DNA of 64,000 nt from IMG/VR virus record IMGVR_UViG_3300035698_029839, positions 1-64,000 of that record; one strand, 5' to 3'. Shown here in pieces: positions 13,461-62,723 of this stretch (position 1 is its first letter; every line of letters begins with the position of its first letter). The notes below the pieces were generated by a model. It was not told the origin of the DNA. It searched no databases and was given only the letters and a program-made list of their open reading frames with translations. Both the position numbers and the translations under genes were made by a program.

Positions 13461-14579
13461 ATGAAATTAGTTATTCTTTGTAATTTTGGTCCTTATTCTT
13501 CAGTAGGGGGTTCAGAGGCAGTTATCTCGGCTATTGCAGAAAGGCTAATATGTCCGCCATATAATTATGAAATTGATATATATGCTCATAATTATAAGAA
13601 AGATTCTATACATAAAGGTATAAATTTATTTCCATGTCCTAAGGGTGATAATATAGTCCCCATAATAGCTCAAAACGAGCACATAATGGTTTATAGCGAC
13701 TCTCAATGGAACTTTGACTCATTATTAGGGTCTATTGGTAAAACTGCCCAGAAAGCCTCTATTTGCCTTGTAGGGGCATATCATCTTCAATCTCATCCAC
13801 AATCTCTACAATTACTAAAAGAAAATATAAGTAGATTTAATCTTATCACCCATTCCCAAATAACTTGTGATTATAAGTTCTGTATTGACAATGATTTACC
13901 TGTTAAGGTGGTTCCAAATGGAGTAAATTTGTCCGAATTTGAGAAAAGTGAAATAGATTTTAGACAAAAGTACAATATTAAAGAAAAATATATGATTTTG
14001 AATGTGGGAAATTTTTTTTATGGAAAGGGTTTTGAGCTTATTCCCAAAATAGCTCAAAAATTATCAGAGGATTTAGACGATTTTGTTATTGTTCAATGTT
14101 CTAATACTATCAGATATCCTTACGATAAAATATTTTTTGAAAGAACAAAAAAACAAAGTAAGGGATTAAATGTAAGATTTTTAAGGGATCTTCCTAGAGT
14201 AGATATCGTAGCGGCATTCAAAGAATCTGATATGTTCTTATTCCCTAGTAAAAAGGAGATTGCTCCTATTGTTATTCTTGAATGTAGGGCCGCTAAATTA
14301 CCTTATATCTCAATGAAGGTAGGAAATATGATGGAGAATCCAGGTGGAGTTCCAGTCAATTATCAGAAAGTAGATAATAAGGGGTATGTATTAATTGAAG
14401 ATAGTATTATCAGACATTTTTCAGCGGGTATCTTTAATAGTTTAATACCTATGAAAATAAATGGCAAGAAGAATACAAGGGCATTTAAAAATATCCTTAT
14501 TTCTGATGGACAAGAAGATATAGAGTCTATTGATTGGGATCAGATTGTCCCTTTATATGATGAGGTATTTAAAGGGTGA
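13461..14579 (+). CDS. Glycosyltransferase family 4 (GT-B)
   Basis: GGSE, VPNGV, GKG, FLFPSKKEIAPIVILE (E-x7-E). Confidence 0.85.
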   Translation: MKLVILCNFGPYSSVGGSEAVISAIAERLICPPYNYEIDIYAHNYKKDSIHKGINLFPCPKGDNIVPIIAQNEHIMVYSDSQWNFDSLLGSIGKTAQKASICLVGAYHLQSHPQSLQLLKENISRFNLITHSQITCDYKFCIDNDLPVKVVPNGVNLSEFEKSEIDFRQKYNIKEKYMILNVGNFFYGKGFELIPKIAQKLSEDLDDFVIVQCSNTIRYPYDKIFFERTKKQSKGLNVRFLRDLPRVDIVAAFKESDMFLFPSKKEIAPIVILECRAAKLPYISMKVGNMMENPGGVPVNYQKVDNKGYVLIEDSIIRHFSAGIFNSLIPMKINGKKNTRAFKNILISDGQEDIESIDWDQIVPLYDEVFKG

Positions 14580-14845
14580 GATATAAAGTAGGAGATAAAG
14601 TTAAAATAAAGACTTGGGGTGAAACGAAAAAACTTGTTAATTTTAATTCTTTTATGGAAAAAGAAGTTGAGGAATTGAAAACTAATAGAATATTAACTAT
14701 TAAAGTAGTAAATGAAGGTTGTTATTATGCTATGAAAGAATCACGGTGGTTTTGGAATGATGATATGATTAAATGTTTAGCAAAAGACTTTAAAAAAGAA
14801 ATATACGAACCTATTAATGATAGATTTGAGATATTAGATTTATGA
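14576..14845 (+). CDS. Small SH3/KOW-like protein with C-terminal RFEILDL tag
   Basis: YKVGDKVKIKTW...WFWNDDMI; paralog of 33322..33642; ends PINDRFEILDL. Confidence 0.65.
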   Translation: MRYKVGDKVKIKTWGETKKLVNFNSFMEKEVEELKTNRILTIKVVNEGCYYAMKESRWFWNDDMIKCLAKDFKKEIYEPINDRFEILDL

Positions 14846-15561
14846 GTAATCCATTAGTTAGTGTAATAATGACGGTTTATAACTGTGAAAAGTTTATAGA
14901 GCAATCTTTAGATTCTGTTCTTAATCAAACTTTTAAAGATTTTGAGATTATCATATATAATGATGCTTCTACAGATAGAACGATGGATATGGTGATAGAT
15001 ATTATGAAAGATAATAAAAGTAATGTTCTTATTTCTGGTGGTAAAAATGTAGGTTGTGGAGAGGGAAGGAATAGAGCAATTGGGGAGGCAAGAGGAAAGT
15101 ATCTTGTAATTCAAGATGCTGATGATATAAGTTTGCAATGTCGATTGGAAAAAGAAGTTAATTTTTTAGAAAATAATGATGATATATTTTGTATTGGTGG
15201 ATGGGCCAATAAAACTGATCAAGATGGACATTTCATAGAGTTGATGAGCTATCCTCGTTCTACTCATGAAGAAATTTATAATGATATAATGGTTAAGAAG
15301 AATAACCCTATTATTGATCCATCATGTATGTATAGGAGAGATTTATTTAATAAACTTGGTGGTTATGATGGACGTTGGAGATTAGTCCCTGATTTTAATT
15401 TATGGGTAAGAGCAGCTCAAGAAGGTTTTAAATTTTCAAATTTCCAGGAGGTGTTGGTTTATTATAGGCAACACCCTAATAGTGTGACAAATAAGAGCGA
15501 GATGGCTGTTGTTAGAGAACATTTTAAAATGTGTAAAGAACTTCTTAAATTAAGAAAATAA
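14842..15561 (+). CDS. Glycosyltransferase family 2
   Basis: PLVSVIMTVYN, NDASTD, QDADD, DFNLWVR. Confidence 0.9.
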   Translation: MSNPLVSVIMTVYNCEKFIEQSLDSVLNQTFKDFEIIIYNDASTDRTMDMVIDIMKDNKSNVLISGGKNVGCGEGRNRAIGEARGKYLVIQDADDISLQCRLEKEVNFLENNDDIFCIGGWANKTDQDGHFIELMSYPRSTHEEIYNDIMVKKNNPIIDPSCMYRRDLFNKLGGYDGRWRLVPDFNLWVRAAQEGFKFSNFQEVLVYYRQHPNSVTNKSEMAVVREHFKMCKELLKLRK

Positions 15562-15622
15562 AGGTTTTTAAACAAGATCTTTGAATAATATAAAATGAAA
15601 TACTTTGATATGGAGATGTGTT

Positions 15623-16093: not shown

Positions 16094-16102
16094 AGAGTTA
16101 AT

Positions 16103-17698: not shown

Positions 17699-17709
17699 GA
17701 GTAAGGGGC

Positions 17710-20781: not shown

Positions 20782-22440
20782 ATGAAATCAGTTAGTAAAA
20801 AAGTGAGTGAAGCAACATTGGCAGAAATGTGTACCGATAAGTTTAAGGATGATTTTTTCAATATGTTACGTTGTCGTTATCCTTTATTCTACATTACACA
20901 TAATGAAGAAAAAAGATTAACACAATTTTTAACTCATTTTTGTACAGTAAAAGGGTACGAGTGTTTTCTTTGGGACAGTTATAATGGTTTGGTAAGTTTG
21001 GCTAGTGGAGAAGAAGTAGCTGGTACTACCGAAGAGTTGAAGAATAATCCATTAGCTATTCTTGATCATATTATTAGCGAGGGAAGAGCTTTTGAAAAAC
21101 AGAAATCAAGTGTTCAAGAAAAAAAGGAAAAGGGTGTCAACGGAATTATATATGTCCTTTTAGATTATTTTAATTTTATTACCCCGAACCCAGATATTGA
21201 GAGGCGATTTGTAGCAATATCTAATTTGAATTGTATTGTTAGCACTATTTGTACTGGTCCTTATTACCAAGCTACGGATGTGGTTCAGAACATTCTTCCT
21301 ATGATAGAATTTCCTTATGCCAATAAAAAAGAAATTCGTCATGCTTTATATGACGTAGTTAAAGGTGCTGAGAGAAAGATTCCCGACATAGCAAAGAAAA
21401 CTAAGGTAATGGAAGAAGAACTTATTAATGCTGTCACTGGCTTAACATTAATGGAGGCACAAACTGCTTTTTCAAAATCTCTTGTCTCTTTTCATGATTG
21501 GAACATACCTCTTATTCTCGAAGAGAAAAAACAAATTATAAGTAAGGGTGGTCTATTAGAGTATTTTGATAAGCCTGTTTCTATGGAAGATATTGGTGGG
21601 TTAAAGAATTTAACGAAATGGATAAAAGATAGAAAGACATGTTTCTCACAAGAAGCTGAAGATTATGGGTTAAATAAGCCAAGAGGTTTACTTACTATTG
21701 GTATGCCTGGTTGTGGAAAATCGTTGGTTTGCAAGGCTATTAGTAGCGTTTGGAAGATGCCTCTGTTAAGACTTGATTTCGGAAAACTTTTTGGTAGTCT
21801 TGTCGGAGATTCCGAAAAGAATGCCAGAGAAGCAATTAGGCAAGCCGAGGCTATAGCTCCAGCAATTTTATGGATTGACGAAATTGAAAAAGCAATATCG
21901 GGTAATAGTTCAAGTAGTCAGACGGACGGTGGAACTACTAGTCGTGTGCTGAGCACTTTTCTTACATGGATGCAGGAAAAAACTTCTCCTGTTTTTGTTG
22001 TTGCAACAGCTAATGATCATCAGGCTATTCCTCCTGAGTTTTTAAGGGCAGGTCGTTTTGATGAGATATTTTTCGTGGATTTGCCAAATATAGATGAAAG
22101 AGAAGAAATATGTAATGTGCTTCTTAGACTTAGAAATATCGACTCAAAAAAGATGAACACAATACTAATGGCCGAAAAAAGCGAAGGATACAGTGGCGCT
22201 GAAATTGAAAAGGGTATTGATAATGCCATGTTGGTTGGTTTTAAAGATGGTGCTAGACAAATTGATACTGATGATATTGTATTTGCTCTTGGTCAATTTA
22301 AATCTCTTTTCGATATGAGAAAAGCAGATTTTGAAGAACTTATAGAATGGGCTGAAAATAAATGCAGAATGGCCAATGCGGAATCTAAGAATATTGTCAA
22401 TTTAGGACAGCATAGTTCAGCTAAGGATTTAGATTTATAG
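20782..22440 (+). CDS. AAA+ ATPase, Ycf46/SpoVK-like (inactive N-domain plus one AAA module)
   Basis: DIGGLKNL, GMPGCGKS, LWIDEIEK, ATAN, PPEFLRAGRFDEIFFVDLP, GYSGAEIE; ends KDLDL. Confidence 0.9.
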   Translation: MKSVSKKVSEATLAEMCTDKFKDDFFNMLRCRYPLFYITHNEEKRLTQFLTHFCTVKGYECFLWDSYNGLVSLASGEEVAGTTEELKNNPLAILDHIISEGRAFEKQKSSVQEKKEKGVNGIIYVLLDYFNFITPNPDIERRFVAISNLNCIVSTICTGPYYQATDVVQNILPMIEFPYANKKEIRHALYDVVKGAERKIPDIAKKTKVMEEELINAVTGLTLMEAQTAFSKSLVSFHDWNIPLILEEKKQIISKGGLLEYFDKPVSMEDIGGLKNLTKWIKDRKTCFSQEAEDYGLNKPRGLLTIGMPGCGKSLVCKAISSVWKMPLLRLDFGKLFGSLVGDSEKNAREAIRQAEAIAPAILWIDEIEKAISGNSSSSQTDGGTTSRVLSTFLTWMQEKTSPVFVVATANDHQAIPPEFLRAGRFDEIFFVDLPNIDEREEICNVLLRLRNIDSKKMNTILMAEKSEGYSGAEIEKGIDNAMLVGFKDGARQIDTDDIVFALGQFKSLFDMRKADFEELIEWAENKCRMANAESKNIVNLGQHSSAKDLDL

Positions 22441-23760: not shown

Positions 23761-23767
23761 AAAGAAT

Positions 23768-26863: not shown

Positions 26864-27285
26864 TAGAGAATAAATTTATGATTAATTTTACAGATATAAC
26901 TATTAATGAAGCGGATGGGGTTTTTGCAGATGTAGAGGAAATAATGTTGGCAGAAGTTCCTTCTGTTAAAAATTGGGTTATAAGAAGTTATGTTACAATT
27001 ATTAGTGATAGCGGAGAAGGGACAATGGAGATACAATGTCATGGAGATGGTAATGTTTACATAATAGATTACGACCCGTCAATAGGAGATTTATTTTATA
27101 ATCCTGATATACAAGAGATTTCTATATGGGCTCAGGAAAAAGGGTGGAAAATACCTCAACCTCATCCTGATTTAATTAAATCGAATAAAGAGTTTTGGAA
27201 ATATTTTTATGATACTCTTGTGATAGACTCTGAATATCTCGATAAGTTATATGGGGGTAGACCACAAATAGATGGGAGTAAATAG
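26851..27285 (+). CDS. Hypothetical protein
   Basis: ORF track. Confidence 0.5.
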   Translation: MENLIENKFMINFTDITINEADGVFADVEEIMLAEVPSVKNWVIRSYVTIISDSGEGTMEIQCHGDGNVYIIDYDPSIGDLFYNPDIQEISIWAQEKGWKIPQPHPDLIKSNKEFWKYFYDTLVIDSEYLDKLYGGRPQIDGSK

Positions 27286-27515
27286 TGAATGCAGAAAAAG
27301 CTATAAAAGAAGGATATAAATGTTTTTGTTTACAATGTAACAAGGCTTATAAAAAAACTCCAAGTTATTGGGAGGAAAAAGCCAGTTGCACTGGAGCAGA
27401 GATAGAAATGTGTAGTTGCGGTTCTGATTTGTTTATGTCTTTTGAGCAGTATGTTAAACAACACGAAAAAGAAGATGGGCCTATAGAGAATCGTCTGGAT
27501 ATTTTGGATTTATGA
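27285..27515 (+). CDS. Small Zn-ribbon protein with C-terminal RLDILDL tag
   Basis: CLQC...CSCGS; ends PIENRLDILDL. Confidence 0.6.
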   Translation: MNAEKAIKEGYKCFCLQCNKAYKKTPSYWEEKASCTGAEIEMCSCGSDLFMSFEQYVKQHEKEDGPIENRLDILDL

Positions 27516-28314: not shown

Positions 28315-28529
28315 TGGAGTACAAGTGTCAAACAGTTGATATGCAATGTATGATTGTTGGGGCAAAAGGATTTTTTACTCCTATTTGTGAAAGTTGCACA
28401 ACGTTGGATTGCACTAATCCCATTGAAAAAACTAAAGTGAGTATATTGGGAGTTGTGAAAGAAATAAAAGTTTATAATAGAGGAAATTCTCCAAGACTTG
28501 TAGTACAATGTGAAGGATATATGCCATAA
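28314..28529 (+). CDS. Small Cys-rich protein
   Basis: CESC...C...C. Confidence 0.5.
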   Translation: MEYKCQTVDMQCMIVGAKGFFTPICESCTTLDCTNPIEKTKVSILGVVKEIKVYNRGNSPRLVVQCEGYMP

Positions 28530-29320
28530 TGTTTAGATCTATTAATTTATCAGAAGCTTATTTAAAAGATTATGCTCTTCGTAAAGATGCTAAAAAGCAG
28601 TACGGATCGACTATAAAGAATATTAAAAAAATTAAAGATATAGCTCTTAAAATCATTAAATATCCAGAGCATAAAGAAGCTTATGATTATGTTGATGATT
28701 TATTTCCAAGAGTCAAGGTGAAGGAAGTTTCTGTTTATAAGGTTGCCGCGAAGGATCTGGCAAAAATGGGATATGCTGGAGCAGAAGGTTTTTACGATAG
28801 TATTTCTAAGGCAATAGTTGTTTGCGGGGCTCGTAAACTTACCCAACCAGAAAATAAAAGATATCGCATATTAGCTAAAATTGAAAGAGATGAAGTTATT
28901 GTTCATGAGTTGTGTCATTATTGTTATTTTTTTGAAGGAAAAAGATCAATAAGTAGCGAGATGAGAGAAGAATTCGCTTATGGATGGTCAATTGGATATT
29001 TAAGGCAAAAAGGTTATACTGATGAACAAATAGTGAAATATAATTTTTTACCATATCTGGTAAGTCTTTCATATGATGAAGCTATTAAAAATATATTAGT
29101 ATGGAATAATATAAGTACTTATGAGTATAATAATCATTCTAAATATCAGAGAAAAGAATTTCAAAAAACTTTCTCTGGTAAAGTTTTTGACAGAGCTAAA
29201 GAAATAGCTATGGAAAAAGGGTTCAAATTAATTGATCTTTATTCTAAAAAGATAGAAGAAGGTACGGGTTTATCTGATGAGGAAGAGGATTTAGACCGAT
29301 TTGATTATTTGGATTTGTAA
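28529..29320 (+). CDS. Putative zincin-like metallopeptidase with C-terminal RFDYLDL tag
   Basis: EGFY...VIVHELCH...EEFAY (HExxH plus downstream E). Confidence 0.6.
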   Translation: MFRSINLSEAYLKDYALRKDAKKQYGSTIKNIKKIKDIALKIIKYPEHKEAYDYVDDLFPRVKVKEVSVYKVAAKDLAKMGYAGAEGFYDSISKAIVVCGARKLTQPENKRYRILAKIERDEVIVHELCHYCYFFEGKRSISSEMREEFAYGWSIGYLRQKGYTDEQIVKYNFLPYLVSLSYDEAIKNILVWNNISTYEYNNHSKYQRKEFQKTFSGKVFDRAKEIAMEKGFKLIDLYSKKIEEGTGLSDEEEDLDRFDYLDL

Positions 29321-29373: not shown

Positions 29374-29883
29374 ATGAGTTATGAAAAAAAAATAAATGAT
29401 TATGTAATTAAATTTAAAGATGAACAAAGTTATTTAGAAGCAAAATTAGAAAATTTAAAATTACACCCAGATATACCTTTTCTTGGTTTTATCCAAAATG
29501 AGATGTATAACAGGGAGAAGTGCGAAGTTGAGAGCATAGAAGAAGTTAATGATGGTACTCAATATATTTCTTCTGTTCAAATATTATCGGGAGGTTCTAT
29601 ATCTGAAAACGGGGATTTTGGCGATATTATCGTCGGCAGCGAGAATCTAACCCTTTCTGGTAGTTTAGATTACACCATCAATAATGGGAATAGTCTTTAT
29701 ATAAGTACTGCTGGGGATAATGGTGCTAACTCTAATTATAATTCTTTTATAGGTTGGTCAGCAACTGATTCTCACAATGGTAATAGTAATGTTCTTATTG
29801 GCGGGTACCCTAGTGATCAATCAGAAGAGTTAAAAGAGCCAGAAGATCCAATAGAGAATAGGTTCGATATTTTAGATTTATAA
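29374..29883 (+). CDS. Hypothetical protein with C-terminal RFDILDL tag
   Basis: Gly/Asn-rich NSFIG...NVLIGG segment; ends PIENRFDILDL. Confidence 0.6.
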   Translation: MSYEKKINDYVIKFKDEQSYLEAKLENLKLHPDIPFLGFIQNEMYNREKCEVESIEEVNDGTQYISSVQILSGGSISENGDFGDIIVGSENLTLSGSLDYTINNGNSLYISTAGDNGANSNYNSFIGWSATDSHNGNSNVLIGGYPSDQSEELKEPEDPIENRFDILDL

Positions 29884-30190: not shown

Positions 30191-30225
30191 TTGAAAAGTG
30201 AAAGCCGAAAAGACATAATAAGTAT
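30191..30225 (+). promoter_or_regulatory. Representative copy of recurrent intergenic motif TTGAAAAGTGA (putative phage promoter, class A)
   Basis: Exact or 1-mismatch copies at 13424, 17174, 20724, 30191, 33644, 37690, 39478 and 46758, each about 33-70 nt upstream of a start codon. Confidence 0.65.
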
Positions 30226-30585
30226 ATGAGATTCATACGAAAAGAATTTATAGTCACAACTATATTTAACAAAGAATTAACTGAGAAAGATGAAGTTCTA
30301 ATTGTTTTTAATAATCTGCTAAATGAGAGAATAGAATTCTCTATGATTATGAAAAAATACATGCCTCATCAACAAGATTATTTTAGCATAAGTTTTGAGA
30401 GGGTGAGAGTAAAAAAGATATATGAAAATGATACTGTTGATTTATTAGCTTTCAAAAAAGGAGTTAAAACAAGTATGAAAGCTGTGCCCTTTGATGATGT
30501 TATAGAAATAAATGCGACTACTAAAAAACATAAAATTTTAGATATAAATTCGGACATTGATAGATTCGATATTTTAGATTTGTAA
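30226..30585 (+). CDS. Hypothetical protein with C-terminal RFDILDL tag
   Basis: Ends SDIDRFDILDL. Confidence 0.6.
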   Translation: MRFIRKEFIVTTIFNKELTEKDEVLIVFNNLLNERIEFSMIMKKYMPHQQDYFSISFERVRVKKIYENDTVDLLAFKKGVKTSMKAVPFDDVIEINATTKKHKILDINSDIDRFDILDL

Positions 30586-31122: not shown

Positions 31123-32532
31123 ATGATTTTTGATAATAAAGATTATGTTCCGCTGCATTGTCATTCCGAATTTAGTCAATTTGATGGTTTGGCAAATATA
31201 AATGATCTAGCAATGCAAGCTAGGAAAATGGGTTTCCCAGCATGTGCTCTCACTGACCATGGTAATATTATGGGTTGGATTAAATGGCTTCAAGCATGTA
31301 GAGCCACAAAAGATAAGAAAGGTAAAGATATTCCTTATGCTCCTATTAAACCTATTCTAGGGTGTGAATTTTATTTATCTCGAAAGATGGATATAGGACA
31401 AAATCAAGAAAAAAGAGATACCGAAGTCATAAAAAAGAATCAACCTGATGGACGCAGGGGAAATAGACATTTAAATCTTTATGCTATGAATTTTGAAGGT
31501 TATAAGAATATATGCAATATGTCTCAAAGGTCTTATACGGAGGGATTTTATTACGATCCTAGAATTGATATCGATATGTTATCAAAGCATTCCAAGGGTG
31601 TTATGTGTGGTTCTGCATGTCTTTCTAGTGTTATTAATGCTAATCTAATGTATGGACGTTACAACCAAGCTAGAGAGACTTGTGGTATTTTAAACGAGAT
31701 CTTTGATGGTAATTTCTTTTTAGAGATGATGTACCATGGGATTAGTGAAGAAAAAGAAATTATTCCTTTAATTTTAAAATTGTCAACAGAATTAAATATT
31801 CCTGTTGTTTGTACCAATGATAGTCATTATATCCATAAGGACCAAGGAGCATCTCAAGAAGTTTTATTATGTATGTCTCAACAAAGATGTTTGAAAGATC
31901 CTAAAAGATTAAAATTCGGTCATATGGAATTTTATTTTAAGAGCGCGGAAGAAATGGCAGTTATGTTTGGACATGTTCCTCATGCTTTAACTAATTCTGT
32001 TGTTCTTGCTGAAAGAATAGATACTAAAGATATAGAGAAAAATCTTTTTGGAGGTATGAGACTACCTAAGTTTGATATACCTAAAAAATATAAAAATCCA
32101 TATGATTATATGTCTATTTTAGCATGGGAAGGAATGGAGAGAATTGGATGGGACAAAAGTAAAGAACATGTAGATACTTTAAAAATGGAATTAGAAGATG
32201 TGAAAGTTGCATATGAAAATAATAATTATGATTTCTCTACATATTTTTTAATAGTTAGAGATTATATATTAGAAGCTAAAAAGATGGGAACTTTTGTTGG
32301 TTGCGGCCGTGGTTCTGGGTATGCTAGTGTATTATTAAGATGTCTTGAAATTACTTATGGGGTAGATCCATTAAAGTACGGTCTTCTATGGGAAAGATTT
32401 TTGGGATTTGACTCCAAAAGGTTTATTAAAGAATCAGATTTCGGATTTGAAGAAGACTTGGTGCAACAAGCAGCAGATAGAGATTTGGAAGGAGATTTAG
32501 AGGAAGATTTAGGAGGCATTGATAGATATTGA
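31123..32532 (+). CDS. dnaE: DNA polymerase III alpha, fragment 1 (PHP domain and start of palm)
   Basis: LHCHSEFS.FDG, TDHG, PILGCEFY, TNDSHY, GCGRGSG, DPLKYGLLWERFL. Confidence 0.9.
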   Translation: MIFDNKDYVPLHCHSEFSQFDGLANINDLAMQARKMGFPACALTDHGNIMGWIKWLQACRATKDKKGKDIPYAPIKPILGCEFYLSRKMDIGQNQEKRDTEVIKKNQPDGRRGNRHLNLYAMNFEGYKNICNMSQRSYTEGFYYDPRIDIDMLSKHSKGVMCGSACLSSVINANLMYGRYNQARETCGILNEIFDGNFFLEMMYHGISEEKEIIPLILKLSTELNIPVVCTNDSHYIHKDQGASQEVLLCMSQQRCLKDPKRLKFGHMEFYFKSAEEMAVMFGHVPHALTNSVVLAERIDTKDIEKNLFGGMRLPKFDIPKKYKNPYDYMSILAWEGMERIGWDKSKEHVDTLKMELEDVKVAYENNNYDFSTYFLIVRDYILEAKKMGTFVGCGRGSGYASVLLRCLEITYGVDPLKYGLLWERFLGFDSKRFIKESDFGFEEDLVQQAADRDLEGDLEEDLGGIDRY

Positions 32533-32756
32533 TAGATACAGATATTAATTGGAATGAACTAACAGAGCAAGAGAGAGAGAAAATACTTCAAAAAATATTA
32601 TCAACAGAAGAAGGTCTAACTGCAATGGCTATGAGTATGGCTCCCTCGCAGAAGGGATATAAGGAAGCACAAGAAATATATATTAAAAAATATGGAAGAA
32701 TAAAAAAAGAAATACTTGTTCCTATAAATGATAGATTTGAAATATTGGATTTATGA
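32529..32756 (+). CDS. Small protein with RFEILDL tag
   Basis: Ends PINDRFEILDL; N-terminus similar to 32772. Confidence 0.6.
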   Translation: MIDTDINWNELTEQEREKILQKILSTEEGLTAMAMSMAPSQKGYKEAQEIYIKKYGRIKKEILVPINDRFEILDL

Positions 32757-32771
32757 AGGAAGAACTTACAA

Positions 32772-33065
32772 ATGGCTTTATCTGATTGGTCTGAAGAAAA
32801 CAAAGAAATAATTAAAAATGCTTTAAAAACGACAGAAGGAAGAGAAGGATTTAAAGAAGCTTTTTATGATACTGTAAATATTTCACTAGAAGATTATTTA
32901 ACGCAAACTTCTGAATCTTTAGGAACAGATGATTTAGAAAAGCATGTGCATAAAATAGTAGAAGATGTATCAGACATATTAGAAATAATTTATGAAAAAG
33001 ATGAAATAAAAGAAACAAAAATAGATAATCCTATAACTACCAGATTGGATATATTAGATTTATGA
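32772..33065 (+). CDS. Small protein with RLDILDL tag
   Basis: Ends PITTRLDILDL. Confidence 0.6.
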   Translation: MALSDWSEENKEIIKNALKTTEGREGFKEAFYDTVNISLEDYLTQTSESLGTDDLEKHVHKIVEDVSDILEIIYEKDEIKETKIDNPITTRLDILDL

Positions 33066-33319
33066 TTAAGGAAGAATTTAAACATGTTAAACTTTTTCCA
33101 ATGCAGGAAAATTTAATTGAAGAGATGGCAAAGGTTCAACCAATTGCAGACGAGTTAGAAGCACTAGGATATATCTATGCTCCGTACATTCCTTTGCAAA
33201 TATCTCTTACTCCTACTCTTAATATTTCTGATTTAATTACTCCCAAAAAATATACTATTAGGAAATATACAGATATTTATTCAGATATTGATAATAGATT
33301 TGAAATATTGGACTTATAA
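33062..33319 (+). CDS. Small protein with RFEILDL tag and a gp23-like GYIYAPYIPL peptide
   Basis: LGYIYAPYIPLQ; ends DIDNRFEILDL. Confidence 0.6.
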   Translation: MIKEEFKHVKLFPMQENLIEEMAKVQPIADELEALGYIYAPYIPLQISLTPTLNISDLITPKKYTIRKYTDIYSDIDNRFEILDL

Positions 33320-33321
33320 TT

Positions 33322-33642
33322 ATGAAATACAAAGTTGGCGACATAGTAAAAATAAAAACATGGGAAGCTATGGGGAGAGAGTTTATTTTTACGACTAGTG
33401 GGAATATATCAATACATAAGACTTCTCAGTATTCAACAGGGATGGAAGATCTTTTAAAAGAGATAGATACTAATAGGGTAGTAACAATATTAAAAGTGAT
33501 AGATAATGTTGTTCCCCCCAGAATACCTCATTACAAGATAGAAGAATTTGATGCTACATGGGTTTGGACAGATGAGATGATAGAGTGTAGTGCAGTGCCA
33601 GCAGTGCCGATACAAGACAGATTTGAGATTTTAGATTTATAG
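33322..33642 (+). CDS. Small SH3/KOW-like protein with RFEILDL tag
   Basis: YKVGDIVKIKTW...WVWTDEMI; paralog of 14576. Confidence 0.62.
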   Translation: MKYKVGDIVKIKTWEAMGREFIFTTSGNISIHKTSQYSTGMEDLLKEIDTNRVVTILKVIDNVVPPRIPHYKIEEFDATWVWTDEMIECSAVPAVPIQDRFEILDL

Positions 33643-33678
33643 TTTGTAAAGTGAAAGTTATTTTAATATATTTAAGTA

Positions 33679-34722: not shown

Positions 34723-34743
34723 TTTCTTACAGGAGGTATAGTA

Positions 34744-35604: not shown

Positions 35605-35845
35605 CGAAGAAAATGAATTGCCTGAAAAATTTAAAGAAGTAATGCATCGTGCTTTTAAAGATTGTGACGAATTTTATAATGAAATTAGGGATATTCCTAT
35701 TAGTAAAGTAAAAGATTTAACAAATATAATAAAACTTTTTAAATCAAATATCTCAAATGAAAATGAGCAGAGTTATATTATAGACGGAAAAAGGGTTTTC
35801 AACCTGGCCGATATTAAAGAGGTTCAAAAAAAATATAATGAGTAA
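35597..35845 (+). CDS. Hypothetical protein inside the split-intein locus
   Basis: ORF overlapping both neighbours. Confidence 0.5.
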   Translation: MISEENELPEKFKEVMHRAFKDCDEFYNEIRDIPISKVKDLTNIIKLFKSNISNENEQSYIIDGKRVFNLADIKEVQKKYNE

Positions 35846-35978
35846 TTTAAATTTGTTTAATATAGAATCAATTGAAGAATTAGATTTTGAAGATGTTTAT
35901 GATATTTCAATAGATGAAGATTGTGTTTTTTTTCAAAACGAGCATAATTATATAGCAAATAATATAGTTGTTCATAAT
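35838..35978 (+). mobile_element. Split intein, C-fragment (47 aa)
   Basis: VYDISI...HNYIANNIVVHN followed by Ser+1. Confidence 0.88.
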
Positions 35979-50503: not shown

Positions 50504-50735
50504 AGTTATACATATAATTTCTAATCATCTATCAATAGAATTACAAAAAGAAGATTTAAATTCTAATTTTATTGTGGATTTAGGTGCGGACAGTTTGGAC
50601 TTGATTGGAGTTGTAATGTTGGTAGAAGAAGAATTTAATTTGTCTCCTATTCCTGATAAAGAAGCAGAAAATATTTTAACTACAAAATTATTAATAAATT
50701 ATATTTATACAAAATTGAATAATGAGTCTAGCTAA
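50478..50735 (+). CDS. acpP: Acyl carrier protein
   Basis: DLGADSLD...VEEEF...IPDKEAE; phosphopantetheine Ser present. Confidence 0.88.
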   Translation: MDRQEIENKVIHIISNHLSIELQKEDLNSNFIVDLGADSLDLIGVVMLVEEEFNLSPIPDKEAENILTTKLLINYIYTKLNNESS

Positions 50736-51123
50736 ATATATTCCATTAAGAGATGCCATACTGAAATATGGTGGCAAAGATATGCCAGTTATAGCCATAA
50801 AGAAGTTTTGTGTAGATATAGATAGACTAACATCTTCTTATGAGGTGTGGTTAGATGTTAATGATGCTTCTGGGATAGTAGAGGCATCTGATAATGTTGT
50901 AGTTAATGCTATTAGTTTAGTTCCTACAGATATGGACGAACCTGCATTTTTCGTTATTGATGGAATATCTGTTTCTTGTTCTATAAAACACTATGTTTAT
51001 CATTCTATTAAACATGCTTATTTAGTTAGGGTAGAGTTTCTTTTAAGTAGAGATGATGTTAAACCATATATGATCGAGGAAGATAATAAAGATCAAAATC
51101 GTTTTGATATTTTGGACTTATGA
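50722..51123 (+). CDS. Hypothetical protein with RFDILDL tag
   Basis: Ends DQNRFDILDL. Confidence 0.6.
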   Translation: MSLAKYIPLRDAILKYGGKDMPVIAIKKFCVDIDRLTSSYEVWLDVNDASGIVEASDNVVVNAISLVPTDMDEPAFFVIDGISVSCSIKHYVYHSIKHAYLVRVEFLLSRDDVKPYMIEEDNKDQNRFDILDL

Positions 51124-51452
51124 GCGATAAAGTTAAACAAATTACTATTGATGACTCAGTAACAGATAAGGAGTCTATCTATAAAATATTAGCACAATGT
51201 GCACATGATGAAGGAATCTCAATTTTTAAAGTAGCAGATAGTTCTATCGATAATATCCAAAAAATGGATAAAGACTGTCGAAGATATCGACAAAGAATTA
51301 GCGAACTCGCTGGAAAAGAAAGCAAATATAGAAAAGAAGTATTAGAACTAGAGAGAAAAAAGATAAAACTTGAGAAAGGACTTAAAGAGTTAGAAAAAGA
51401 AATAAATTTTCGAGTTATGAATGATAGTCGTTCTAATTGGTTGGATTTATAA
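51120..51452 (+). CDS. Coiled-coil protein with divergent tag (RSNWLDL)
   Basis: Ends DSRSNWLDL. Confidence 0.55.
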   Translation: MSDKVKQITIDDSVTDKESIYKILAQCAHDEGISIFKVADSSIDNIQKMDKDCRRYRQRISELAGKESKYRKEVLELERKKIKLEKGLKELEKEINFRVMNDSRSNWLDL

Positions 51453-51922
51453 TGGACTTATTACAAGTAATAATACCACAACCTCCAGATTTTCGTATCT
51501 TGTTGGAAGATAATGAAGAAATAAGAATTATAAGATATGAACAAATAAATATGAATTTTTGTGATAGGGTAGTATACAAAGATGGTAAAAAGAAAACAGT
51601 TCAATCTCCACTTATTACTTATTTAGTCGAATTAGATAATCAATCAAAAGAGCAATTAAAGAAATTATTTTCAGATTCTTTTGAATCTAATGATAGCACG
51701 ATACAAACAAGATCTGCTAGAATCAAAGTGGGTAGAGATGGATATGTATATAATGTAGAAGTATCAGCTAGACCAGATATGAATGATTTTGTTTATTCTT
51801 CCAAAATATTTCAAGAAAGAGTTAAAATATGTTTAAGGCTAGAAGAGACGAGTATATCTTTATTTGATAGAGCGAATGAGGCTTATGAAAAATATGAACG
51901 TTTTGAGATTTTGGATTTATAA
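51452..51922 (+). CDS. Hypothetical protein with RFEILDL tag
   Basis: Ends YERFEILDL; TAATG coupling to the upstream gene. Confidence 0.6.
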   Translation: MDLLQVIIPQPPDFRILLEDNEEIRIIRYEQINMNFCDRVVYKDGKKKTVQSPLITYLVELDNQSKEQLKKLFSDSFESNDSTIQTRSARIKVGRDGYVYNVEVSARPDMNDFVYSSKIFQERVKICLRLEETSISLFDRANEAYEKYERFEILDL

Positions 51923-52374
51923 TGGCTGTGATTGGTCCTATGATGTTTGGTGGTAAGTTTTCTATTTATAGCAATGGCGCTGAGGTTCTAAAAAATTTAG
52001 AAATAGTGGGATGGCGGGTTGAAGATAGAATTTCATCATACGATCATCCTCTATATACTTTTACAGCATCGTGCGGTCATGATAGCGTTCATTATTTTAA
52101 CGTATTGGTTAGGGAAGGGGTTGTTCGTTCTGATGGGGTTTCAATAATAAATTATGAAGGATTAGAGTATCCAGTGTATATAGATTCTTATGAGATGATT
52201 CAACACAATGCTGAGGTTACAAGCATGTCTGGTCATCATGGTTATATTCCAGGTAGTATGGAAGTTATTATTTGTGGCCATATTGATAGTAGAGATATAG
52301 GTGAGGTCGATACTATTATAGAAAAGAAAAAAGAAGTAGCGATAAAAGATCGCTTTGAGATTTTAGATTTATAA
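51922..52374 (+). CDS. Hypothetical protein with RFEILDL tag
   Basis: Ends AIKDRFEILDL. Confidence 0.6.
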   Translation: MAVIGPMMFGGKFSIYSNGAEVLKNLEIVGWRVEDRISSYDHPLYTFTASCGHDSVHYFNVLVREGVVRSDGVSIINYEGLEYPVYIDSYEMIQHNAEVTSMSGHHGYIPGSMEVIICGHIDSRDIGEVDTIIEKKKEVAIKDRFEILDL

Positions 52375-60379: not shown

Positions 60380-60396
60380 ATATTTAATATAGGAAT

Positions 60397-60618
60397 ATGA
60401 TGGACAAAATAAAATTTACATGTTTTAATTGTAACGCAAAATTAGAAATAGATGGAGAATATGGAGGAAGAAGAGGTAGGTGTCCTAAGTGTAAGGCTAA
60501 AAATACAATTCCTTCTTCTGAAGATACTTTAGATGATAGTATAATAATTTTGCTTAACGACATGGAAAAGCACGAAGAAGAAAATGAAAAAGATAATTTA
60601 ATACTTAAGGATATGTAA
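60397..60618 (+). CDS. Zn-ribbon protein
   Basis: IKFTCFNC...GRRGRCPKC. Confidence 0.6.
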   Translation: MMDKIKFTCFNCNAKLEIDGEYGGRRGRCPKCKAKNTIPSSEDTLDDSIIILLNDMEKHEEENEKDNLILKDM

Positions 60619-61400
60619 TGAAATTAACATTTTTAGGTGTGTCTAGTGCTTTGAGTGATGGATTTAATTCTAATATGTTGTTAGATATTGAAGATAAAAC
60701 ATTACTTATTGATTGTGGTATGGATATTAAACATTCTTTAAAAGCCGCCAATAGAAAAGTAGAAGAAATAGATGCTGTTTATATATCTCATTTACATGGG
60801 GACCATATGGCAGGTTTAGAGTGGTTGGCTTTTTATAATTATTTTATAACTAAAAAGAAAATAGATTTATATGTTTGTAAGGAAATTGTTGATGAATTAT
60901 GGAGCATGCTGGCTCCATCTTTATCAAGGCAGAAGGATTCACCATTTTTATCTTTGGAAGATTATTTTTGTGTTTTTAAAATAGACAAATTTAAATCTTT
61001 TATTTTTGGAGATGAAAATTTTTATGTTAATGAGCTAGAACATGTTAGGAATGTAGAGTTTGGGAGCCACAATAGTTATGGAATAGTGTGTTATAGAGAG
61101 CATAATAGAGAGCATAGAAAATGGCAGGAAAATATATTTTATATTTCAACAGATACAGTTGAAAGTAATAGTTTTGATGCTGAATATATTTTTCATGATT
61201 GCGATGTTATGAATTTAAATGGAGTTCATGCTAATTATGATGATTTGAAAAATCATAATAAAGATAGAATAAGAAAAAATATGTGGCTTTATCATTATAC
61301 TGATCTTTCTAAATATGATGGCAAATATGGAGTAATGCCAGATGCTGTTGCAGATGGTTTTGCGGGGTTTGTTAAAGAGGGGCAGATATTTGAGATATGA
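60618..61400 (+). CDS. Metallo-beta-lactamase-fold hydrolase (RNase Z-like)
   Basis: LTFLG, LLIDCG, ISHLHGDH, TD, FHDC, HA, LYHY. Confidence 0.85.
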   Translation: MKLTFLGVSSALSDGFNSNMLLDIEDKTLLIDCGMDIKHSLKAANRKVEEIDAVYISHLHGDHMAGLEWLAFYNYFITKKKIDLYVCKEIVDELWSMLAPSLSRQKDSPFLSLEDYFCVFKIDKFKSFIFGDENFYVNELEHVRNVEFGSHNSYGIVCYREHNREHRKWQENIFYISTDTVESNSFDAEYIFHDCDVMNLNGVHANYDDLKNHNKDRIRKNMWLYHYTDLSKYDGKYGVMPDAVADGFAGFVKEGQIFEI

Positions 61401-62149
61401 AAAATAGAAAAAAGATAATTGGAAGTAGAAATAGGAAAAAAAGAAGAGATAAAATTAAAAGAGATATAGTTGAAAAAAATATATTTTTAAAAATTAAAGA
61501 ATACAGACAGTTTAAAAGATTAAAAGAAGAAATTTTAAAAGATAAAGAGTGCTCAAAGTGTGGGTTGTGTTGTAAAAGTTATAGAATAAGACTTACACAG
61601 GAAGATTTAGATAATGAACCTCAATTAATAGAAAATAGTATTTTATTAACAGAAGACATCATAAAAAAATATAAACTAAGTTGTAAGAAAAAGCACATAA
61701 GAGTTATAAAGACTGTTAGTGAGGAAAATAAGAGATGTATTTTTTATGATGAAAATATAGGATGTAAAATACATTTAACAAAACCCGCTGAATGTGTAGA
61801 ATATGTCCCATCTTTGTCTCACTGCAAAAGCACTGAACTAAAAGATTGTTTTAACTTAGCTTCTTATTATAATATGCAGCAGAAAATTTTTATAAAAAGT
61901 GTAAAAAATTGCAGCGCAGAAGAAAAAATAGAGAGGACAAGGAAACTTTTAGAAGCTCTTATTATACCTTTTATAGCAAAGTTTTATAAAAAAGGGGATA
62001 ATATTCAAGCGGAACCAGAGAATGAAAAATTGATACCTTCTTTTATAAAAAGGTGTTTAGATCTAGATGATAGTTATAAGTTTATAAAAGATTTACCCAT
62101 GGTAAAGAGTCATAATGATAAAATTAATACAGATGGTTTTGAGGATTAG
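61397..62149 (+). CDS. YkgJ-family Cys-cluster protein
   Basis: CSKCGLCC...CIFY...GCKIH..KP.EC. Confidence 0.75.
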   Translation: MKNRKKIIGSRNRKKRRDKIKRDIVEKNIFLKIKEYRQFKRLKEEILKDKECSKCGLCCKSYRIRLTQEDLDNEPQLIENSILLTEDIIKKYKLSCKKKHIRVIKTVSEENKRCIFYDENIGCKIHLTKPAECVEYVPSLSHCKSTELKDCFNLASYYNMQQKIFIKSVKNCSAEEKIERTRKLLEALIIPFIAKFYKKGDNIQAEPENEKLIPSFIKRCLDLDDSYKFIKDLPMVKSHNDKINTDGFED

Positions 62150-62174
62150 TTAAAGGGGGGCAGATATTTAAAAT

Positions 62175-62723
62175 ATGAGTAAAAAAGGGCCAGTAATAAA
62201 AAATACTAATAAGAGTCACAATCGTCATGGGAGTAATTGTAACGATAATAGTAGAGTTATAGTTGGCAAATCCCCTGGTGATCATATTCCTTATAGTTGG
62301 TCTGTTCAAAAGTCTGTAGAGCATTATATAACTAAATATGAGTTGAAATGTTCTCTTTTACAGTTTCCTAGTAGAGCACCGTGGCAGAAGCTTCTTTCTG
62401 ATAACAAAGTATCTAATGAGTTTTTAGATGTTTTTGCTAATAGGGTAATTTGGAGTGCGGTTTGTAGGTATCAAAAATTATCTGAAAAGATTATGGACAA
62501 ACATGCTAATCTATTAGATTGGCCAATAGTTTCTTCTTGCCAGAAAATGTCTAAAAGATTTATTTTTAGGCATAAAAAAGAATTAGATATGGATATTGTT
62601 AGTAATAGATTTTTGATTACTCAAGAGGATTTAGACCAGTGTGAGAAAGAAGAAAAAGAAAGAGTCGCATTTATGGAAGGCGGCGAGGAGATAGAAGATC
62701 GTTTTGATATTTTGGATATGTAG
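62175..62723 (+). CDS. Trp-repeat protein with RFDILDM tag
   Basis: W..V..YQKLSEK..DKH...LDW..VS..QKMS..FI..H; ends IEDRFDILDM. Confidence 0.6.
   Translation: MSKKGPVIKNTNKSHNRHGSNCNDNSRVIVGKSPGDHIPYSWSVQKSVEHYITKYELKCSLLQFPSRAPWQKLLSDNKVSNEFLDVFANRVIWSAVCRYQKLSEKIMDKHANLLDWPIVSSCQKMSKRFIFRHKKELDMDIVSNRFLITQEDLDQCEKEEKERVAFMEGGEEIEDRFDILDM

What the first reader, a model, noticed from the sequence alone, without database searches (positions are those of the whole stretch)
14576..62723. A shared C-terminal peptide tag, R-F-[D/E]-I-L-D-L-stop, on 14 mostly unrelated phage proteins: candidate undescribed tag/adaptor system
Seen: proteins ending at 14845 (PINDRFEILDL), 27515 (PIENRLDILDL), 29320 (DLDRFDYLDL), 29883 (PIENRFDILDL), 30585 (DIDRFDILDL), 32756 (PINDRFEILDL), 33065 (PITTRLDILDL), 33319 (IDNRFEILDL), 33642 (PIQDRFEILDL), 51123 (QNRFDILDL), 51452 (SRSNWLDL), 51922 (YERFEILDL), 52374 (IKDRFEILDL) and 62723 (IEDRFDILDM). 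The motif is always flush with the stop codon. The upstream bodies differ: SH3-like, Zn-ribbon, HExxH peptidase, coiled coil, Trp-repeat. The Arg codon varies (AGA, CGT, CGA, AGG, CGC), Phe is TTT or TTC, and all three stop codons occur, so selection acts on the peptide rather than a DNA site. Inference: a constant docking motif with a free carboxylate, attached to variable cargo or recognition domains. Options are a degron/adaptor library delivering targets to one machine (AAA+ unfoldase or protease), a virion-packaging signal, or a clamp/hub-binding motif.
Basis: partly seen in the sequence, partly recalled or inferred. Interest (0 to 1): 0.92.

Follow-up and report, generated by a model that had tools for sequence, protein, structure and literature searches.

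The report
Shared C-terminal docking tag in huge phages
About one gene in six in this stretch of an uncultured 298-kb phage ends in the same 11-residue tail, which sits on more than 150 unrelated families of small proteins in related phages and changes in step across all of them within a genome, so it is most likely an address label for one still unidentified partner.

Summary
Thirteen ORFs end in R-[FL]-[DE]-[IY]-L-D-[LM]-stop and one in a degenerate form. About 4e-6 are expected by chance, and the motif never occurs internally in any of the six frames.

The window is bases 1-64000 of a 297,710-bp IMG/VR phage contig. Related uncultured phages of 220-550 kb carry the same tail. I collected 333 unique tagged proteins in 155 sequence clusters. 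They have a median length of about 100 aa, and almost none has a recognisable domain. The consensus is [ED]-P-I-x-[SNDT]-R-F-[ED]-I-L-D-L.

AlphaFold places the tail as a short helix on a flexible linker behind a folded body. Selection acts on the peptide. Leu codon choice stays unexplained; the Glu-codon skew fits overlapping downstream start sites.

The strongest result is concerted change. One relative uses R-W-[QN]-I-L-D-L on all its tagged proteins, and a more distant one uses F-D-x-x-D-x-[DE]. Orthologs follow the local version, and so does the tail of a conserved AAA+ ATPase. This points to one co-evolving receptor.

The receptor is not identified. The tail has the same residue pattern as the clamp-binding tail of RB69 DNA polymerase, and tagged genes are co-transcribed with replication genes. 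A sliding clamp or another replisome hub is my leading guess, and the AAA+ ATPase is second. A free carboxylate is not strictly required.

The parts
14576..14845 (+). Tagged ORF, 89 aa. SH3-like 'MKYKVGD..IKTW' body. Ends PINDRFEILDL.
   Evidence: family alignment A1
27285..27515 (+). Tagged ORF, 76 aa. Cys-rich, Zn-ribbon-like body. Ends PIENRLDILDL.
   Evidence: an ortholog in a 351-kb relative keeps the tag
28529..29320 (+). Tagged ORF, 263 aa, with an HELCH zinc-protease motif. Conserved core gene of the clade, weakly SprT-like. Ends DLDRFDYLDL.
29374..29883 (+). Tagged ORF, 169 aa. Ends PIENRFDILDL. Its orthologs are tagged in all three clades examined.
30226..30585 (+). Tagged ORF, 119 aa. 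Ends DIDRFDILDL. It has its own TTGAAAAGTGAAA promoter-like site at 30191, and its orthologs are tagged in all three clades.
32529..32756 (+). Tagged ORF, 75 aa. Ends PINDRFEILDL. First of four tagged genes lying between two pieces of the split DnaE gene.
32772..33065 (+). Tagged ORF, 97 aa. Ends PITTRLDILDL.
33062..33319 (+). Tagged ORF, 85 aa. Ends IDNRFEILDL.
33322..33642 (+). Tagged ORF, 106 aa, SH3-like family. Ends PIQDRFEILDL. In the AF2 model the body (residues 1-90) has pLDDT about 90, and the tail (91-106) has pLDDT 55-60 with a short helix at 100-105.
50722..51123 (+). Tagged ORF, 133 aa. Ends QNRFDILDL.
51120..51452 (+). ORF of 110 aa with a degenerate tail, SRSNWLDL, and a coiled-coil-like body.
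51437..51922 (+). Tagged ORF, up to 161 aa. Ends YERFEILDL.
51922..52374 (+). Tagged ORF, 150 aa. Ends IKDRFEILDL.
62175..62723 (+). Tagged ORF, 182 aa, Trp-repeat family (phrog_3532). Ends IEDRFDILDM. Homologs in cultured jumbo Firmicute phages have no tag.
20782..22440 (+). AAA+ ATPase (PF00004 plus AAA_lid_3, with a roughly 290-aa N-terminal region). Its C-terminal tail ..AKDLDL resembles the tag and co-varies with it between genomes. It is a candidate partner or receptor.
35838..37685 (+). C-terminal piece of the split DnaE polymerase. It ends in the conserved tail G-V-E-T-V-D-L-F-A, which is probably the polymerase's own clamp-binding motif.
30191..30203 (+). One of six intergenic TTGAAAAGTGAAA-type promoter-like sites (17174, 20724, 30191, 33644, 37690, 46758). 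These sites head both tagged genes and replication genes.

Best explanation
The tail [ED]-P-I-x-[SNDT]-R-F-[ED]-I-L-D-L is a short linear docking motif. It is a two-turn helix with an N-cap residue, held on a flexible linker. It tethers many unrelated small accessory proteins of this clade of huge phages to one common receptor that co-evolves with it.

Shown: the motif is real, lies at or within a few residues of the C-terminus, is under peptide-level selection, is kept in orthologs, and changes in concert within genomes.

Inferred: the receptor belongs to the phage replication apparatus. The leading candidate is a sliding clamp or processivity factor, encoded outside the window or supplied by the host. 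Tagged proteins would then gather on replicating phage DNA, alongside the SprT-like protease and the AAA+ ATPase that carry the same class of tail.

Inferred history: the motif began on a few replication-module proteins. In the window's clade it spread to roughly 15% of genes, through recombination at the 3' ends of tandem, translationally coupled gene cassettes.
For: 1. The motif is far above chance: 13 flush, 0 internal, 4e-6 expected.
2. It is widespread: 333 unique tagged proteins in 155 clusters from the window, IMG/VR and metagenomes, and 248 of 251 occurrences lie within 5 residues of the C-terminus.
3. The tag is an add-on. The SH3-like and Trp-repeat bodies occur without it in other phages.
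4. AF2 gives a confident body and a low-confidence tail with a helix at RFEILD. Position -7 is S/N/D/T in 286 of 307 tags, which is typical of a helix N-cap.
5. The tags change in concert. L296 has R-W-[QN]-I-L-D-L on 7 proteins, with Fisher p about 1e-7 to 3e-8 against the window clade. L298 has [FW]-D-x-x-D-x-[DE] without the Arg. Orthologs of 28529, 29374 and 30226 each carry the local version.
6. The AAA+ tail follows the same changes: KDLDL, then RQLDL, then NIDIE.
7. There is a link to replication. Tagged genes share TTGAAAAGTGAAA promoter-like sites and operons with DnaB, DnaG, DnaE, SSB and UvrD. The best-conserved tagged protein is weakly SprT-like.
8. The tag resembles a known clamp-binding tail. 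RB69 gp43 ends L-F-D-M-F-D-F, the same residue class at all six positions as F-[DE]-I-L-D-L, and nearly identical to the distant-clade form V-F-D-M-L-D-F-D. T4 gp43 and gp55 carry S-L-D-F-L-[FY], with up to 4 trailing residues.
9. The phage DnaE ends in a related conserved tail, [ST]-x-D-[LIM]-F-[AG].
Against: - No clamp, clamp loader or other obvious hub was found. I checked the window, about 80 kb of relatives' gene lists, and 1.6 Mb of fetched loci with a phmmer screen that has low sensitivity.
- The two candidate genes I tested are not clamps. One is a helical bundle and the other is Mu Gam-like.
- Recognisable DNA enzymes are never tagged: ligase, UvrD, methyltransferases, RecA, primase and DnaB. 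That is odd for a clamp toolbelt.
- The polymerase's own tail differs from the tag.
- The resemblance to RB69 and T4 rests on six or seven residues.
- Fifty to a hundred or more clamp partners per genome would be without precedent.
- The AAA+ family also occurs in Mycobacterium phage Corndog, which has a similar AAA+ tail (VRVLDL) but no other tagged proteins.
Confidence: 0.55

Rival explanations
1. The receptor is the phage AAA+ ATPase at 20782-22440 or a machine it docks to. Tagged proteins would be its substrates or adaptors, recognised through the tail and then unfolded, removed or handed to a protease. The tail would work as a timed degron or an adaptor library.
For: - The AAA+ is the only protein outside the tagged set of small proteins that has a tag-like tail, and that tail co-varies with the tags in three clades.
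- It is a conserved core gene in every tag-bearing contig I checked.
- It has a roughly 290-aa N-terminal region of unknown function.
- Tagged proteins are small accessory proteins expressed early or in the middle of infection, the kind that might need timed removal.
- E. coli HslU ends E-D-L-S-R-F-I-L, which shares S-R-F-(x)-I-L with the tag. Tails of that kind dock an unfoldase onto a peptidase.
Against: - No peptidase partner (ClpP, HslV, Lon or proteasome type) turned up in any region examined.
- The AAA+ family occurs in phages that have no tags.
- The match to HslU needs a one-residue insertion and a two-residue extension.
- A tail shared by enzyme and substrates fits a common third partner at least as well as it fits self-recognition.
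Confidence: 0.2
2. The tail is a capsid-loading or injection signal. It would load dozens of small effector-like proteins into the large head for delivery with the DNA, as the T4 capsid-targeting sequence, the HK97 protease tail and encapsulin cargo-loading peptides do.
For: - The architecture is one short terminal signal on many unrelated proteins.
- All tagged proteins are small: the 5th to 95th percentile range is 51-210 aa, and the largest is about 370 aa. That size would suit passage through a tail.
- Anti-defence-like genes lie nearby, including Tad5 and an Apyc1-like gene.
Against: - Tagged genes sit in the same operons and behind the same promoter-like sites as replication genes, not with structural genes.
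- The conserved core carriers are a replication-module protease and the AAA+ ATPase.
- There is no sequence resemblance to the known loading peptides, though this rests on memory and was not tested.
- No capsid or scaffold gene was available for a co-variation test.
Confidence: 0.1
3. The conserved element acts mainly at the nucleic-acid or translation level. It could be a recombination site for shuffling gene cassettes, an RBS module for the next gene, or a nascent peptide acting at termination. On this view the peptide has no binding function.
For: - The consensus DNA is three tandem AGATTTN heptamers.
- GAG and TTR codons are over-represented.
- 40 of 90 tags overlap the start of the next gene, and half are followed by another tagged gene.
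Against: - Arg uses six codons, and F, I and D third positions sit at background frequencies.
- D and E alternate at the same position.
- The GAG bias is confined to tags whose stop overlaps the next start: 27 GAG to 5 GAA there, against 14 to 12 elsewhere.
- Clade variants change amino-acid class in a coordinated way.
- The motif tolerates trailing residues.
- The AAA+ tail co-varies although it lies outside any cassette array.
- Matches to the DNA pattern in bacterial genomes are non-coding simple repeats.
Confidence: 0.05

Closest known systems
C-terminal sliding-clamp interaction peptides of T4-type phages (RB69 gp43, T4 gp43, gp55, gp33 binding gp45)
   Same: - Both are short acidic-hydrophobic peptides at or within a few residues of the C-terminus, placed on otherwise unrelated proteins.
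- RB69 gp43 ends F-D-M-F-D-F and the tag ends F-[DE]-I-L-D-L, so all six positions fall in the same residue class.
- The distant-clade form V-F-D-M-L-D-F-D is nearly identical to the RB69 tail.
- T4 gp55 tolerates four trailing residues, as some tags do.
   Different: - T4 has only a handful of carriers, all with known roles in replication or transcription. Here there are dozens to more than a hundred small proteins of unknown function.
- The tag adds an invariant Arg and a P-I-x-[SNDT] extension.
- The polymerase of this phage is DnaE type, not family B.
- No gp45-like clamp was found.
Bacterial beta-clamp-binding motif QL[SD]LF / QLxLxL (Pol II, Pol IV, Pol III alpha, MutS and others)
   Same: - Both are linear motifs, often at the extreme C-terminus, that bind a hydrophobic cleft on one ring-shaped hub.
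- The tag's I-L-D-L and DnaE's V-D-L-F overlap the L-[SD]-L-F core.
   Different: - The tag has no Gln and no final Phe.
- The tag has strict R and F positions upstream.
- The motif definition is from the literature as I recall it. Binding was not tested.
Vps4 MIT domain binding MIM helices at ESCRT-III C-termini, and SspB's C-terminal ClpX-binding peptide
   Same: In both, a short C-terminal helix or peptide on several proteins docks onto the N-terminal domain of an AAA+ ATPase. This would parallel the rival in which the AAA+ is the receptor.
   Different: - ESCRT-III proteins are homologous to each other.
- The sequences are unrelated to the tag.
- No MIT-like or zinc-binding N-domain was detected in the AAA+ protein.
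HslU C-terminal tail docking into HslV
   Same: E. coli HslU ends S-R-F-I-L and the tag core is [SND]-R-F-[ED]-I-L. Both are C-terminal tails.
   Different: - The tag has one extra residue inside the match and two after it, so the carboxylate would be out of register.
- No HslV-like gene was seen.
Terminal cargo signals: T4 capsid-targeting sequence, HK97 protease tail, encapsulin cargo-loading peptide, peroxisomal PTS1
   Same: The logic is the same: one short terminal address on many unrelated proteins, read by one receptor.
   Different: - The sequences and cellular contexts differ.
- Tagged genes here are expressed with replication genes rather than structural genes.

Membership tests
T4/RB69-type clamp-interaction peptide | Acidic-hydrophobic peptide at or near the C-terminus with the pattern seen in gp43 and gp55 | tested here: met
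   RB69 gp43 ends ..SLFDMFDF. T4 gp43 ends ..SLDFLFG and gp55 ends ..SLDFLYEAND, all read from the genome records. The tag F-[DE]-I-L-D-L has the same residue classes, and the distant form is VFDMLDFD.
T4/RB69-type clamp-interaction peptide | A gp45-like, PCNA-like or beta-like clamp encoded by the phage or used from the host | tested here: inconclusive
   None was found in the window by Pfam or PHROGs. The two candidates I tested are not clamps. A phmmer screen of 2149 ORFs was negative but insensitive. About 230 kb of the contig was not examined.
T4/RB69-type clamp-interaction peptide | The replicative polymerase carries the motif | tested here: inconclusive
   DnaE ends in a conserved but different tail, G[VI]E[ST]xD[LIM]F[AG]. 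It resembles the T4 gp43 and beta-clamp form, not the tag itself.
T4/RB69-type clamp-interaction peptide | Physical binding of the peptide to the clamp | not testable with these tools
   No complex prediction or binding assay was available.
Bacterial beta-clamp-binding motif | Consensus Q-L-[SD]-L-F or Q-L-x-L-x-L | tested here: not met
   The tag has no Gln and no terminal Phe. Only L-D-L overlaps the consensus. The DnaE tail V-D-L-F fits better.
Ligands that need a free C-terminal carboxylate (PDZ class II/III, HbYX) | The motif must end exactly at the C-terminus | tested here: not met
   25 of 251 occurrences have 1-5 trailing residues. Examples are RFEILDIR..IRD..IRKD and ..IQKQEIK. A distant clade always adds D or E.
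HslU-type peptidase-docking tail | Tail ..[ST]-[RK]-[FY]-I-L-COOH on an unfoldase, with an HslV partner | tested here: inconclusive
   E. coli HslU ends EDLSRFIL. The tag matches only if an insertion and an extension are allowed. No HslV homolog was found in the loci screened.
ssrA-like C-terminal degron | Non-polar tail ending in ..LAA or similar, added by tmRNA or encoded, and read by ClpXP or FtsH | tested here: not met
   The tail is acidic and ends in LDL. No tmRNA was found in the window or in 37 related loci. Degradation itself was not testable.
Capsid or encapsulin cargo-loading signal | Carriers are expressed and assembled together with shell or scaffold proteins | tested here: not met
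   Tagged genes share promoter-like sites and operons with replication genes. Virion content was not testable.
Short linear motif (SLiM) read by one receptor | Short and conserved, in a disordered or flexible context, on unrelated proteins, and co-evolving with the receptor | tested here: met
   The consensus is 11 residues with R in 307 of 307 tags and D in 306 of 307. It is found in 155 clusters. The tail has low pLDDT behind a confident body. The tags vary in concert within genomes.

The most novel reading that the evidence does not exclude
A clade of huge phages has its own proteome-scale address system. One 11-residue C-terminal helix has been copied onto more than 100 unrelated small host-takeover or anti-defence proteins per genome. 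It brings them all to a single phage-specified hub, either a clamp on replicating phage DNA or an AAA+ machine. That would be a viral counterpart of eukaryotic targeting signals, and I found no description of it in the papers searched.
Probability: 0.4. Interest if true: 0.85.

Novelty: new variant of a known kind. Interest (0 to 1): 0.72.

Why it matters
If one peptide tethers about 15% of a huge phage's proteins to a single hub, it gives a handle on hundreds of proteins of unknown function. They can be pulled down, localised or switched off together through the tag. It would also show that phages use short-motif hub wiring on a scale known mainly from eukaryotic cells and their viruses.

The concerted change of tag and AAA+ tail between genomes offers a ready co-variation test for finding the receptor. 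The tag is also a simple marker for recognising this uncultured phage clade in metagenomes, and it might serve as a portable recruitment tag.

Tried and rejected
- **DNA similarity to cultured phages.** Nothing was found. The giant Kelch protein matched only a Paenibacillus phage, weakly.
- **Pfam and PHROGs on tagged bodies.** Almost nothing came up apart from DUF4116 repeats and phrog_3532.
- **Literature.** No paper in the library contains the full seven-residue tail or either six-residue fragment; the shorter five-residue fragments I also searched matched only unrelated papers. General searches found nothing relevant.
- **Scan of bacterial genomes with the tag's DNA pattern.** The 45 hits are nearly all non-coding (GATTTKA)n simple repeats. 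Three apparent in-frame hits in GC-rich (2 of 3) genomes are probably spurious ORFs. I rejected this as evidence for host proteins carrying the tag.
- **Restriction-site avoidance (AATT, RAATTY) as the cause of the GAG bias.** Rejected, because those sites are not depleted. Overlap with the next gene's start explains the bias instead.
- **The 406-aa protein next to DnaE as a clamp.** Rejected. It is all-helical and has no fold match.
- **The 224-aa protein as a gp45-like clamp.** Rejected. Its family is Mu Gam / Gp157-like.
- **A conserved neighbour of the AAA+ that could be its partner.** Only replication genes are conserved next to it.
- **Co-variation of an LDI tag variant with the KDLDI AAA+ tail of contig 3300033388_007730.** That contig gave no match to either DNA pattern, so the test failed.
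- **Corndog as a cultured model.** It has the AAA+ tail but no other tagged proteins in bases 1-50,000.
- **tmRNA encoded by the phage.** None was found.
- **Exact look-up of the window's first gene in the contig index.** It is not on record.

Full report
**Observation.** The window has 30.7% G+C and nearly all of its genes lie on the + strand. Thirteen match R[FL][DE][IY]LD[LM] directly before a stop, and the ORF ending at 51452 has a degenerate R-S-N-W-L-D-L. A looser pattern, [FL][DE].LD[LM], occurs 13 times across all six frames. Every occurrence is on the + strand and flush with a stop, and none is internal. From the amino-acid composition, 4e-6 C-terminal hits are expected. None appeared in 2000 shuffles. 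Fourteen of the 62 genes of 275 aa or fewer carry the tail. With the last 12 residues removed, the 14 bodies fall into 13 BLASTP clusters.

**Where the window comes from.** The window is bases 1-64000 of IMG/VR contig 3300035698_029839, which is 297,710 bp long. No cultured phage is related at the DNA level.

The gene content is that of a huge phage:
- giant Kelch/LamG proteins and a glycosyltransferase cluster
- an SF2 helicase, IF3 and an AAA+ ATPase
- a DnaC-like loader, DnaB and a split DnaG
- a DnaE polymerase split into three pieces with intein-like parts
- SSB, RecA, a Mu Gam-like protein and UvrD with an intein
- Tad5-like and Apyc1-like genes

Homologs of one body family occur in jumbo phages of Listeria, Bacillus and Clostridium, and a SpoVS-like gene is present in relatives. 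This hints at a Firmicute host, but it remains an inference.

**Spread of the tail.** A degenerate DNA pattern for the tail found it repeatedly in IMG/VR contigs of 298, 351 and 548 kb and in several fragments. Pooled with the window, this gives 333 unique tagged proteins in 155 clusters, of which 105 are singletons.

The consensus is [ED]-P-I-x-[SNDT]-R-F-[ED]-I-L-D-L. Arg is present in 307 of 307 tags and the penultimate Asp in 306 of 307. Of 251 motif occurrences in metagenome ORFs, 223 are flush with the stop, 25 have 1-5 trailing residues and 3 are internal.

Tagged proteins are small. The 5th to 95th percentile range is 51-210 aa, and the largest I saw is 371 aa. Most are soluble, and their pI values vary widely. 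Proteins with recognisable enzyme domains are not tagged. That includes ThyA, RNA ligase, methyltransferases, thioredoxin, SSB, RecA, the primase, DnaB and UvrD. The exceptions are a 263-aa HExxH protein and a DUF4116-repeat protein.

**The tail is an add-on.**
- The Trp-repeat body (62175-62723) has many homologs without the tail in Listeria phage LPJP1, Bacillus phages BpSp and G, and others.
- The SH3-like 'MKYKVGD..IKTW' body occurs in other viral contigs fused to different C-terminal regions, with no tagged ORFs nearby.
- Untagged paralogs exist inside tag-bearing genomes.
- All 44 metagenome homologs of 33322-33642 keep the motif. In one group it is followed by R, RD, RKD or RDN.

**Peptide or DNA?** Arg uses six codons, and the third positions of Phe, Ile and Asp match background usage. 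There are two departures. The Glu codon is GAG in 41 of 59 cases against a background of 27%. Leu is almost always TTR, even among tags that were not found through the DNA pattern.

The GAG excess is confined to tags whose stop overlaps the next start. There the count is 27 GAG to 5 GAA, against 14 to 12 elsewhere. This fits a Shine-Dalgarno-like role in translational coupling. Forty of 90 tags overlap the next start, and half are followed by another tagged gene.

The consensus DNA happens to be three AGATTTN heptamers. The same pattern picks up non-coding simple repeats in bacterial genomes, and those are not protein tags. I conclude that selection acts mainly on the peptide, with a secondary mRNA constraint.

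**Structure.** AlphaFold2 was run on a 42-sequence alignment of the SH3-like family. It gives a confident alpha/beta body (residues 1-90, pLDDT about 90) and a low-confidence tail (91-106, pLDDT 55-60) with a short helix at 100-105, which is R-F-E-I-L-D. The S/N/D/T preference at -7 and the Pro at -10 fit a helix N-cap. Foldseek found no significant match for the body.

**Concerted variation, the key result.** The HExxH protein is a conserved core gene with 108 homologs down to 35% identity. Three of 46 members hit Pfam SprT-like weakly. Its tail persists across all of this divergence but drifts by clade.

| Genome | Form of the tail | AAA+ ATPase tail |
|---|---|---|
| Window, 351-kb and 548-kb contigs | R-F-[DE]-I-L-D-[LI] | ..KDLDL / ..RDLDL |
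| 275,751-bp relative (L296) | R-W-[QN]-I-L-D-L, on all seven tagged proteins in 21 kb | ..RRQLDL |
| 461-kb-type relative (L298, L239) | [FW]-D-x-x-D-x-[DE], no Arg, extra acidic residue, on four tagged proteins | ..KNIDIE |

In L296, W is at -5 in 6 of 7 tags against 9 of 307 in the window clade. Q or N is at -4 in 5 of 7 against 4 of 307. Fisher p is about 3e-8 and 1e-7. Orthologs of 28529, 29374 and 30226 carry the local version in each genome. Unrelated proteins in one genome changing the same positions together is what a single co-evolving receptor predicts. The AAA+ ATPase appears to belong to the same network. The distant relative has few tags. This suggests that the motif began on a few replication-module proteins and expanded in the window's clade.

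**Timing and context.** An intergenic motif, TTGAAAAGTGAAA, occurs three times exactly and three times nearly, always on the + strand and between genes. A -10-like hexameter follows it about 17 nt downstream. It precedes the AAA+ gene, tagged gene 30226, the middle DnaE piece, the gene block containing the 406-aa protein upstream of SSB, and UvrD. Tagged genes are therefore co-transcribed with replication genes. This argues against a signal used during late capsid assembly. In relatives too, arrays of small genes sit between the pieces of the split DnaE; they are tagged in the closer two relatives (L082, L296) and untagged in the most distant one (L298).

**Which receptor?** I read the known clamp-binding tails from the genome records. 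RB69 gp43 ends ..ASLFDMFDF, T4 gp43 ends ..ASLDFLFG, and gp55 ends ..SLDFLYEAND. The tag F-[DE]-I-L-D-L has the RB69 residue pattern at all six positions. The distant-clade form VFDMLDFD is almost the same peptide. The phage DnaE ends in a conserved G[VI]E[ST]xD[LIM]F[AG], which is close to the T4 gp43 form and to the bacterial QL[SD]LF motif. Large viral genomes frequently encode clamps (PMC3201878).

Against this, I found no clamp:
- The 406-aa neighbour of DnaE is a helical bundle.
- The 224-aa protein is Mu Gam-like.
- Gene lists for about 80 kb of relatives show none.
- A single-sequence phmmer screen of 2149 ORFs was negative for DnaN, gp45, gp44 and HslV, but that screen is insensitive.

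Replication enzymes other than DnaE and the AAA+ lack any such tail. An alternative is that the AAA+ itself, or a partner it docks to, is the receptor. E. coli HslU ends EDLSRFIL, which shares S-R-F-(x)-I-L with the tag. However, the AAA+ family also occurs in phages without tags. Corndog gp96 ends VRVLDL, and there are no other such tails in Corndog bases 1-50,000.

**Verdict.** The finding is real and unusual. It is a clade-specific C-terminal short linear motif on more than 150 unrelated families of small proteins. There is good evidence for a single co-evolving receptor. There is only circumstantial evidence that the receptor belongs to the replication apparatus.

The kind of thing is known: a terminal docking peptide for a hub. 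The scale, the carriers and the concerted variants are new, and no description was found in the papers searched. My confidence in the docking-motif reading is high, about 0.8. My confidence in the specific clamp or replisome receptor is modest, about 0.35-0.4. The 0.55 given for the combined statement reflects both.

Noticed in passing
window 31123-37685: The DnaE (Pol III alpha) gene is split into three ORFs (31123-32532, 33679-34722, 35838-37685). It has intein-like segments and arrays of small genes between the pieces. Relatives L082, L296 and L298 share a split with a small-gene array: two DnaE pieces in L296 and L298, only the C-terminal piece visible in L082.
   Followed up: partly
window 17174, 20724, 30191, 33644, 37690, 46758: An intergenic motif, TTGAAAAGTGAAA, occurs three times exactly and three times nearly. 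A -10-like hexamer follows about 17 nt downstream. It is probably the early or middle promoter class of this phage.
   Followed up: partly
window 39547-40245, 24627-26240, 37908-38222, 43587-44261, 38237-39457: A second kind of tail appears on replication proteins. These are acidic-aromatic C-termini: SSB ..SDSDWENNF, DnaB ..SDNWQDDY, ..SSSPEEEWDFS, the Gam-like protein ..SSSPDDYDSLE, and ..ISWNEI. They suggest a separate network of tail-mediated contacts, of the kind SSB uses.
   Followed up: no
L035-L079 (bacterial genome contigs): The tag's DNA pattern matches non-coding (GATTTKA)n simple repeats in 45 contigs from many phyla, including Planctomycetes genomes with 60-67% G+C. The tag's consensus DNA is itself three AGATTTN heptamers.
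   Followed up: partly
tags in the window and in L001-L032: The Glu codon of the tag is GAG rather than the usual GAA only where the next gene's start overlaps the stop (27 GAG to 5 GAA). This looks like a built-in Shine-Dalgarno-like element for coupled translation. Leu is almost always TTR.
   Followed up: yes
window 20782-22440, L205-L243, L245: The AAA+ family (phrog_8638) has a conserved but clade-variable C-terminal tail. Forms include [KR]-x-L-D-L, GRT[LV]DF, and acidic runs ending in L. It sits in a conserved block of helicase, 317-aa protein, IF3, AAA+, DnaC-like and DnaB. Its function is unknown.
   Followed up: partly
window 22486-23797: An island of three minus-strand genes, with a GC-rich hairpin, lies between the AAA+ and DnaC-like genes. 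It is absent at this position in relatives, so it is probably an insertion.
   Followed up: no
window 54937-55533, 60618-61400, 20212-20721: Three genes here are, in order, a Tad5-like Thoeris inhibitor, an Apyc1-like metallo-beta-lactamase and a phage-encoded IF3. None of them is tagged.
   Followed up: no
window 11128-12342, 55940-57181, 44264-46153, 46821-49805: Several mobile-element-like features are present: DUF4379/HNH endonucleases, a Hint-containing ORF, and UvrD interrupted by an intein.
   Followed up: no
L016:4389-4505, L031:12226-12351: Very short ORFs of 38-41 aa consist of little more than the tail. They might compete for or regulate the receptor, or they may be remnants.
   Followed up: no
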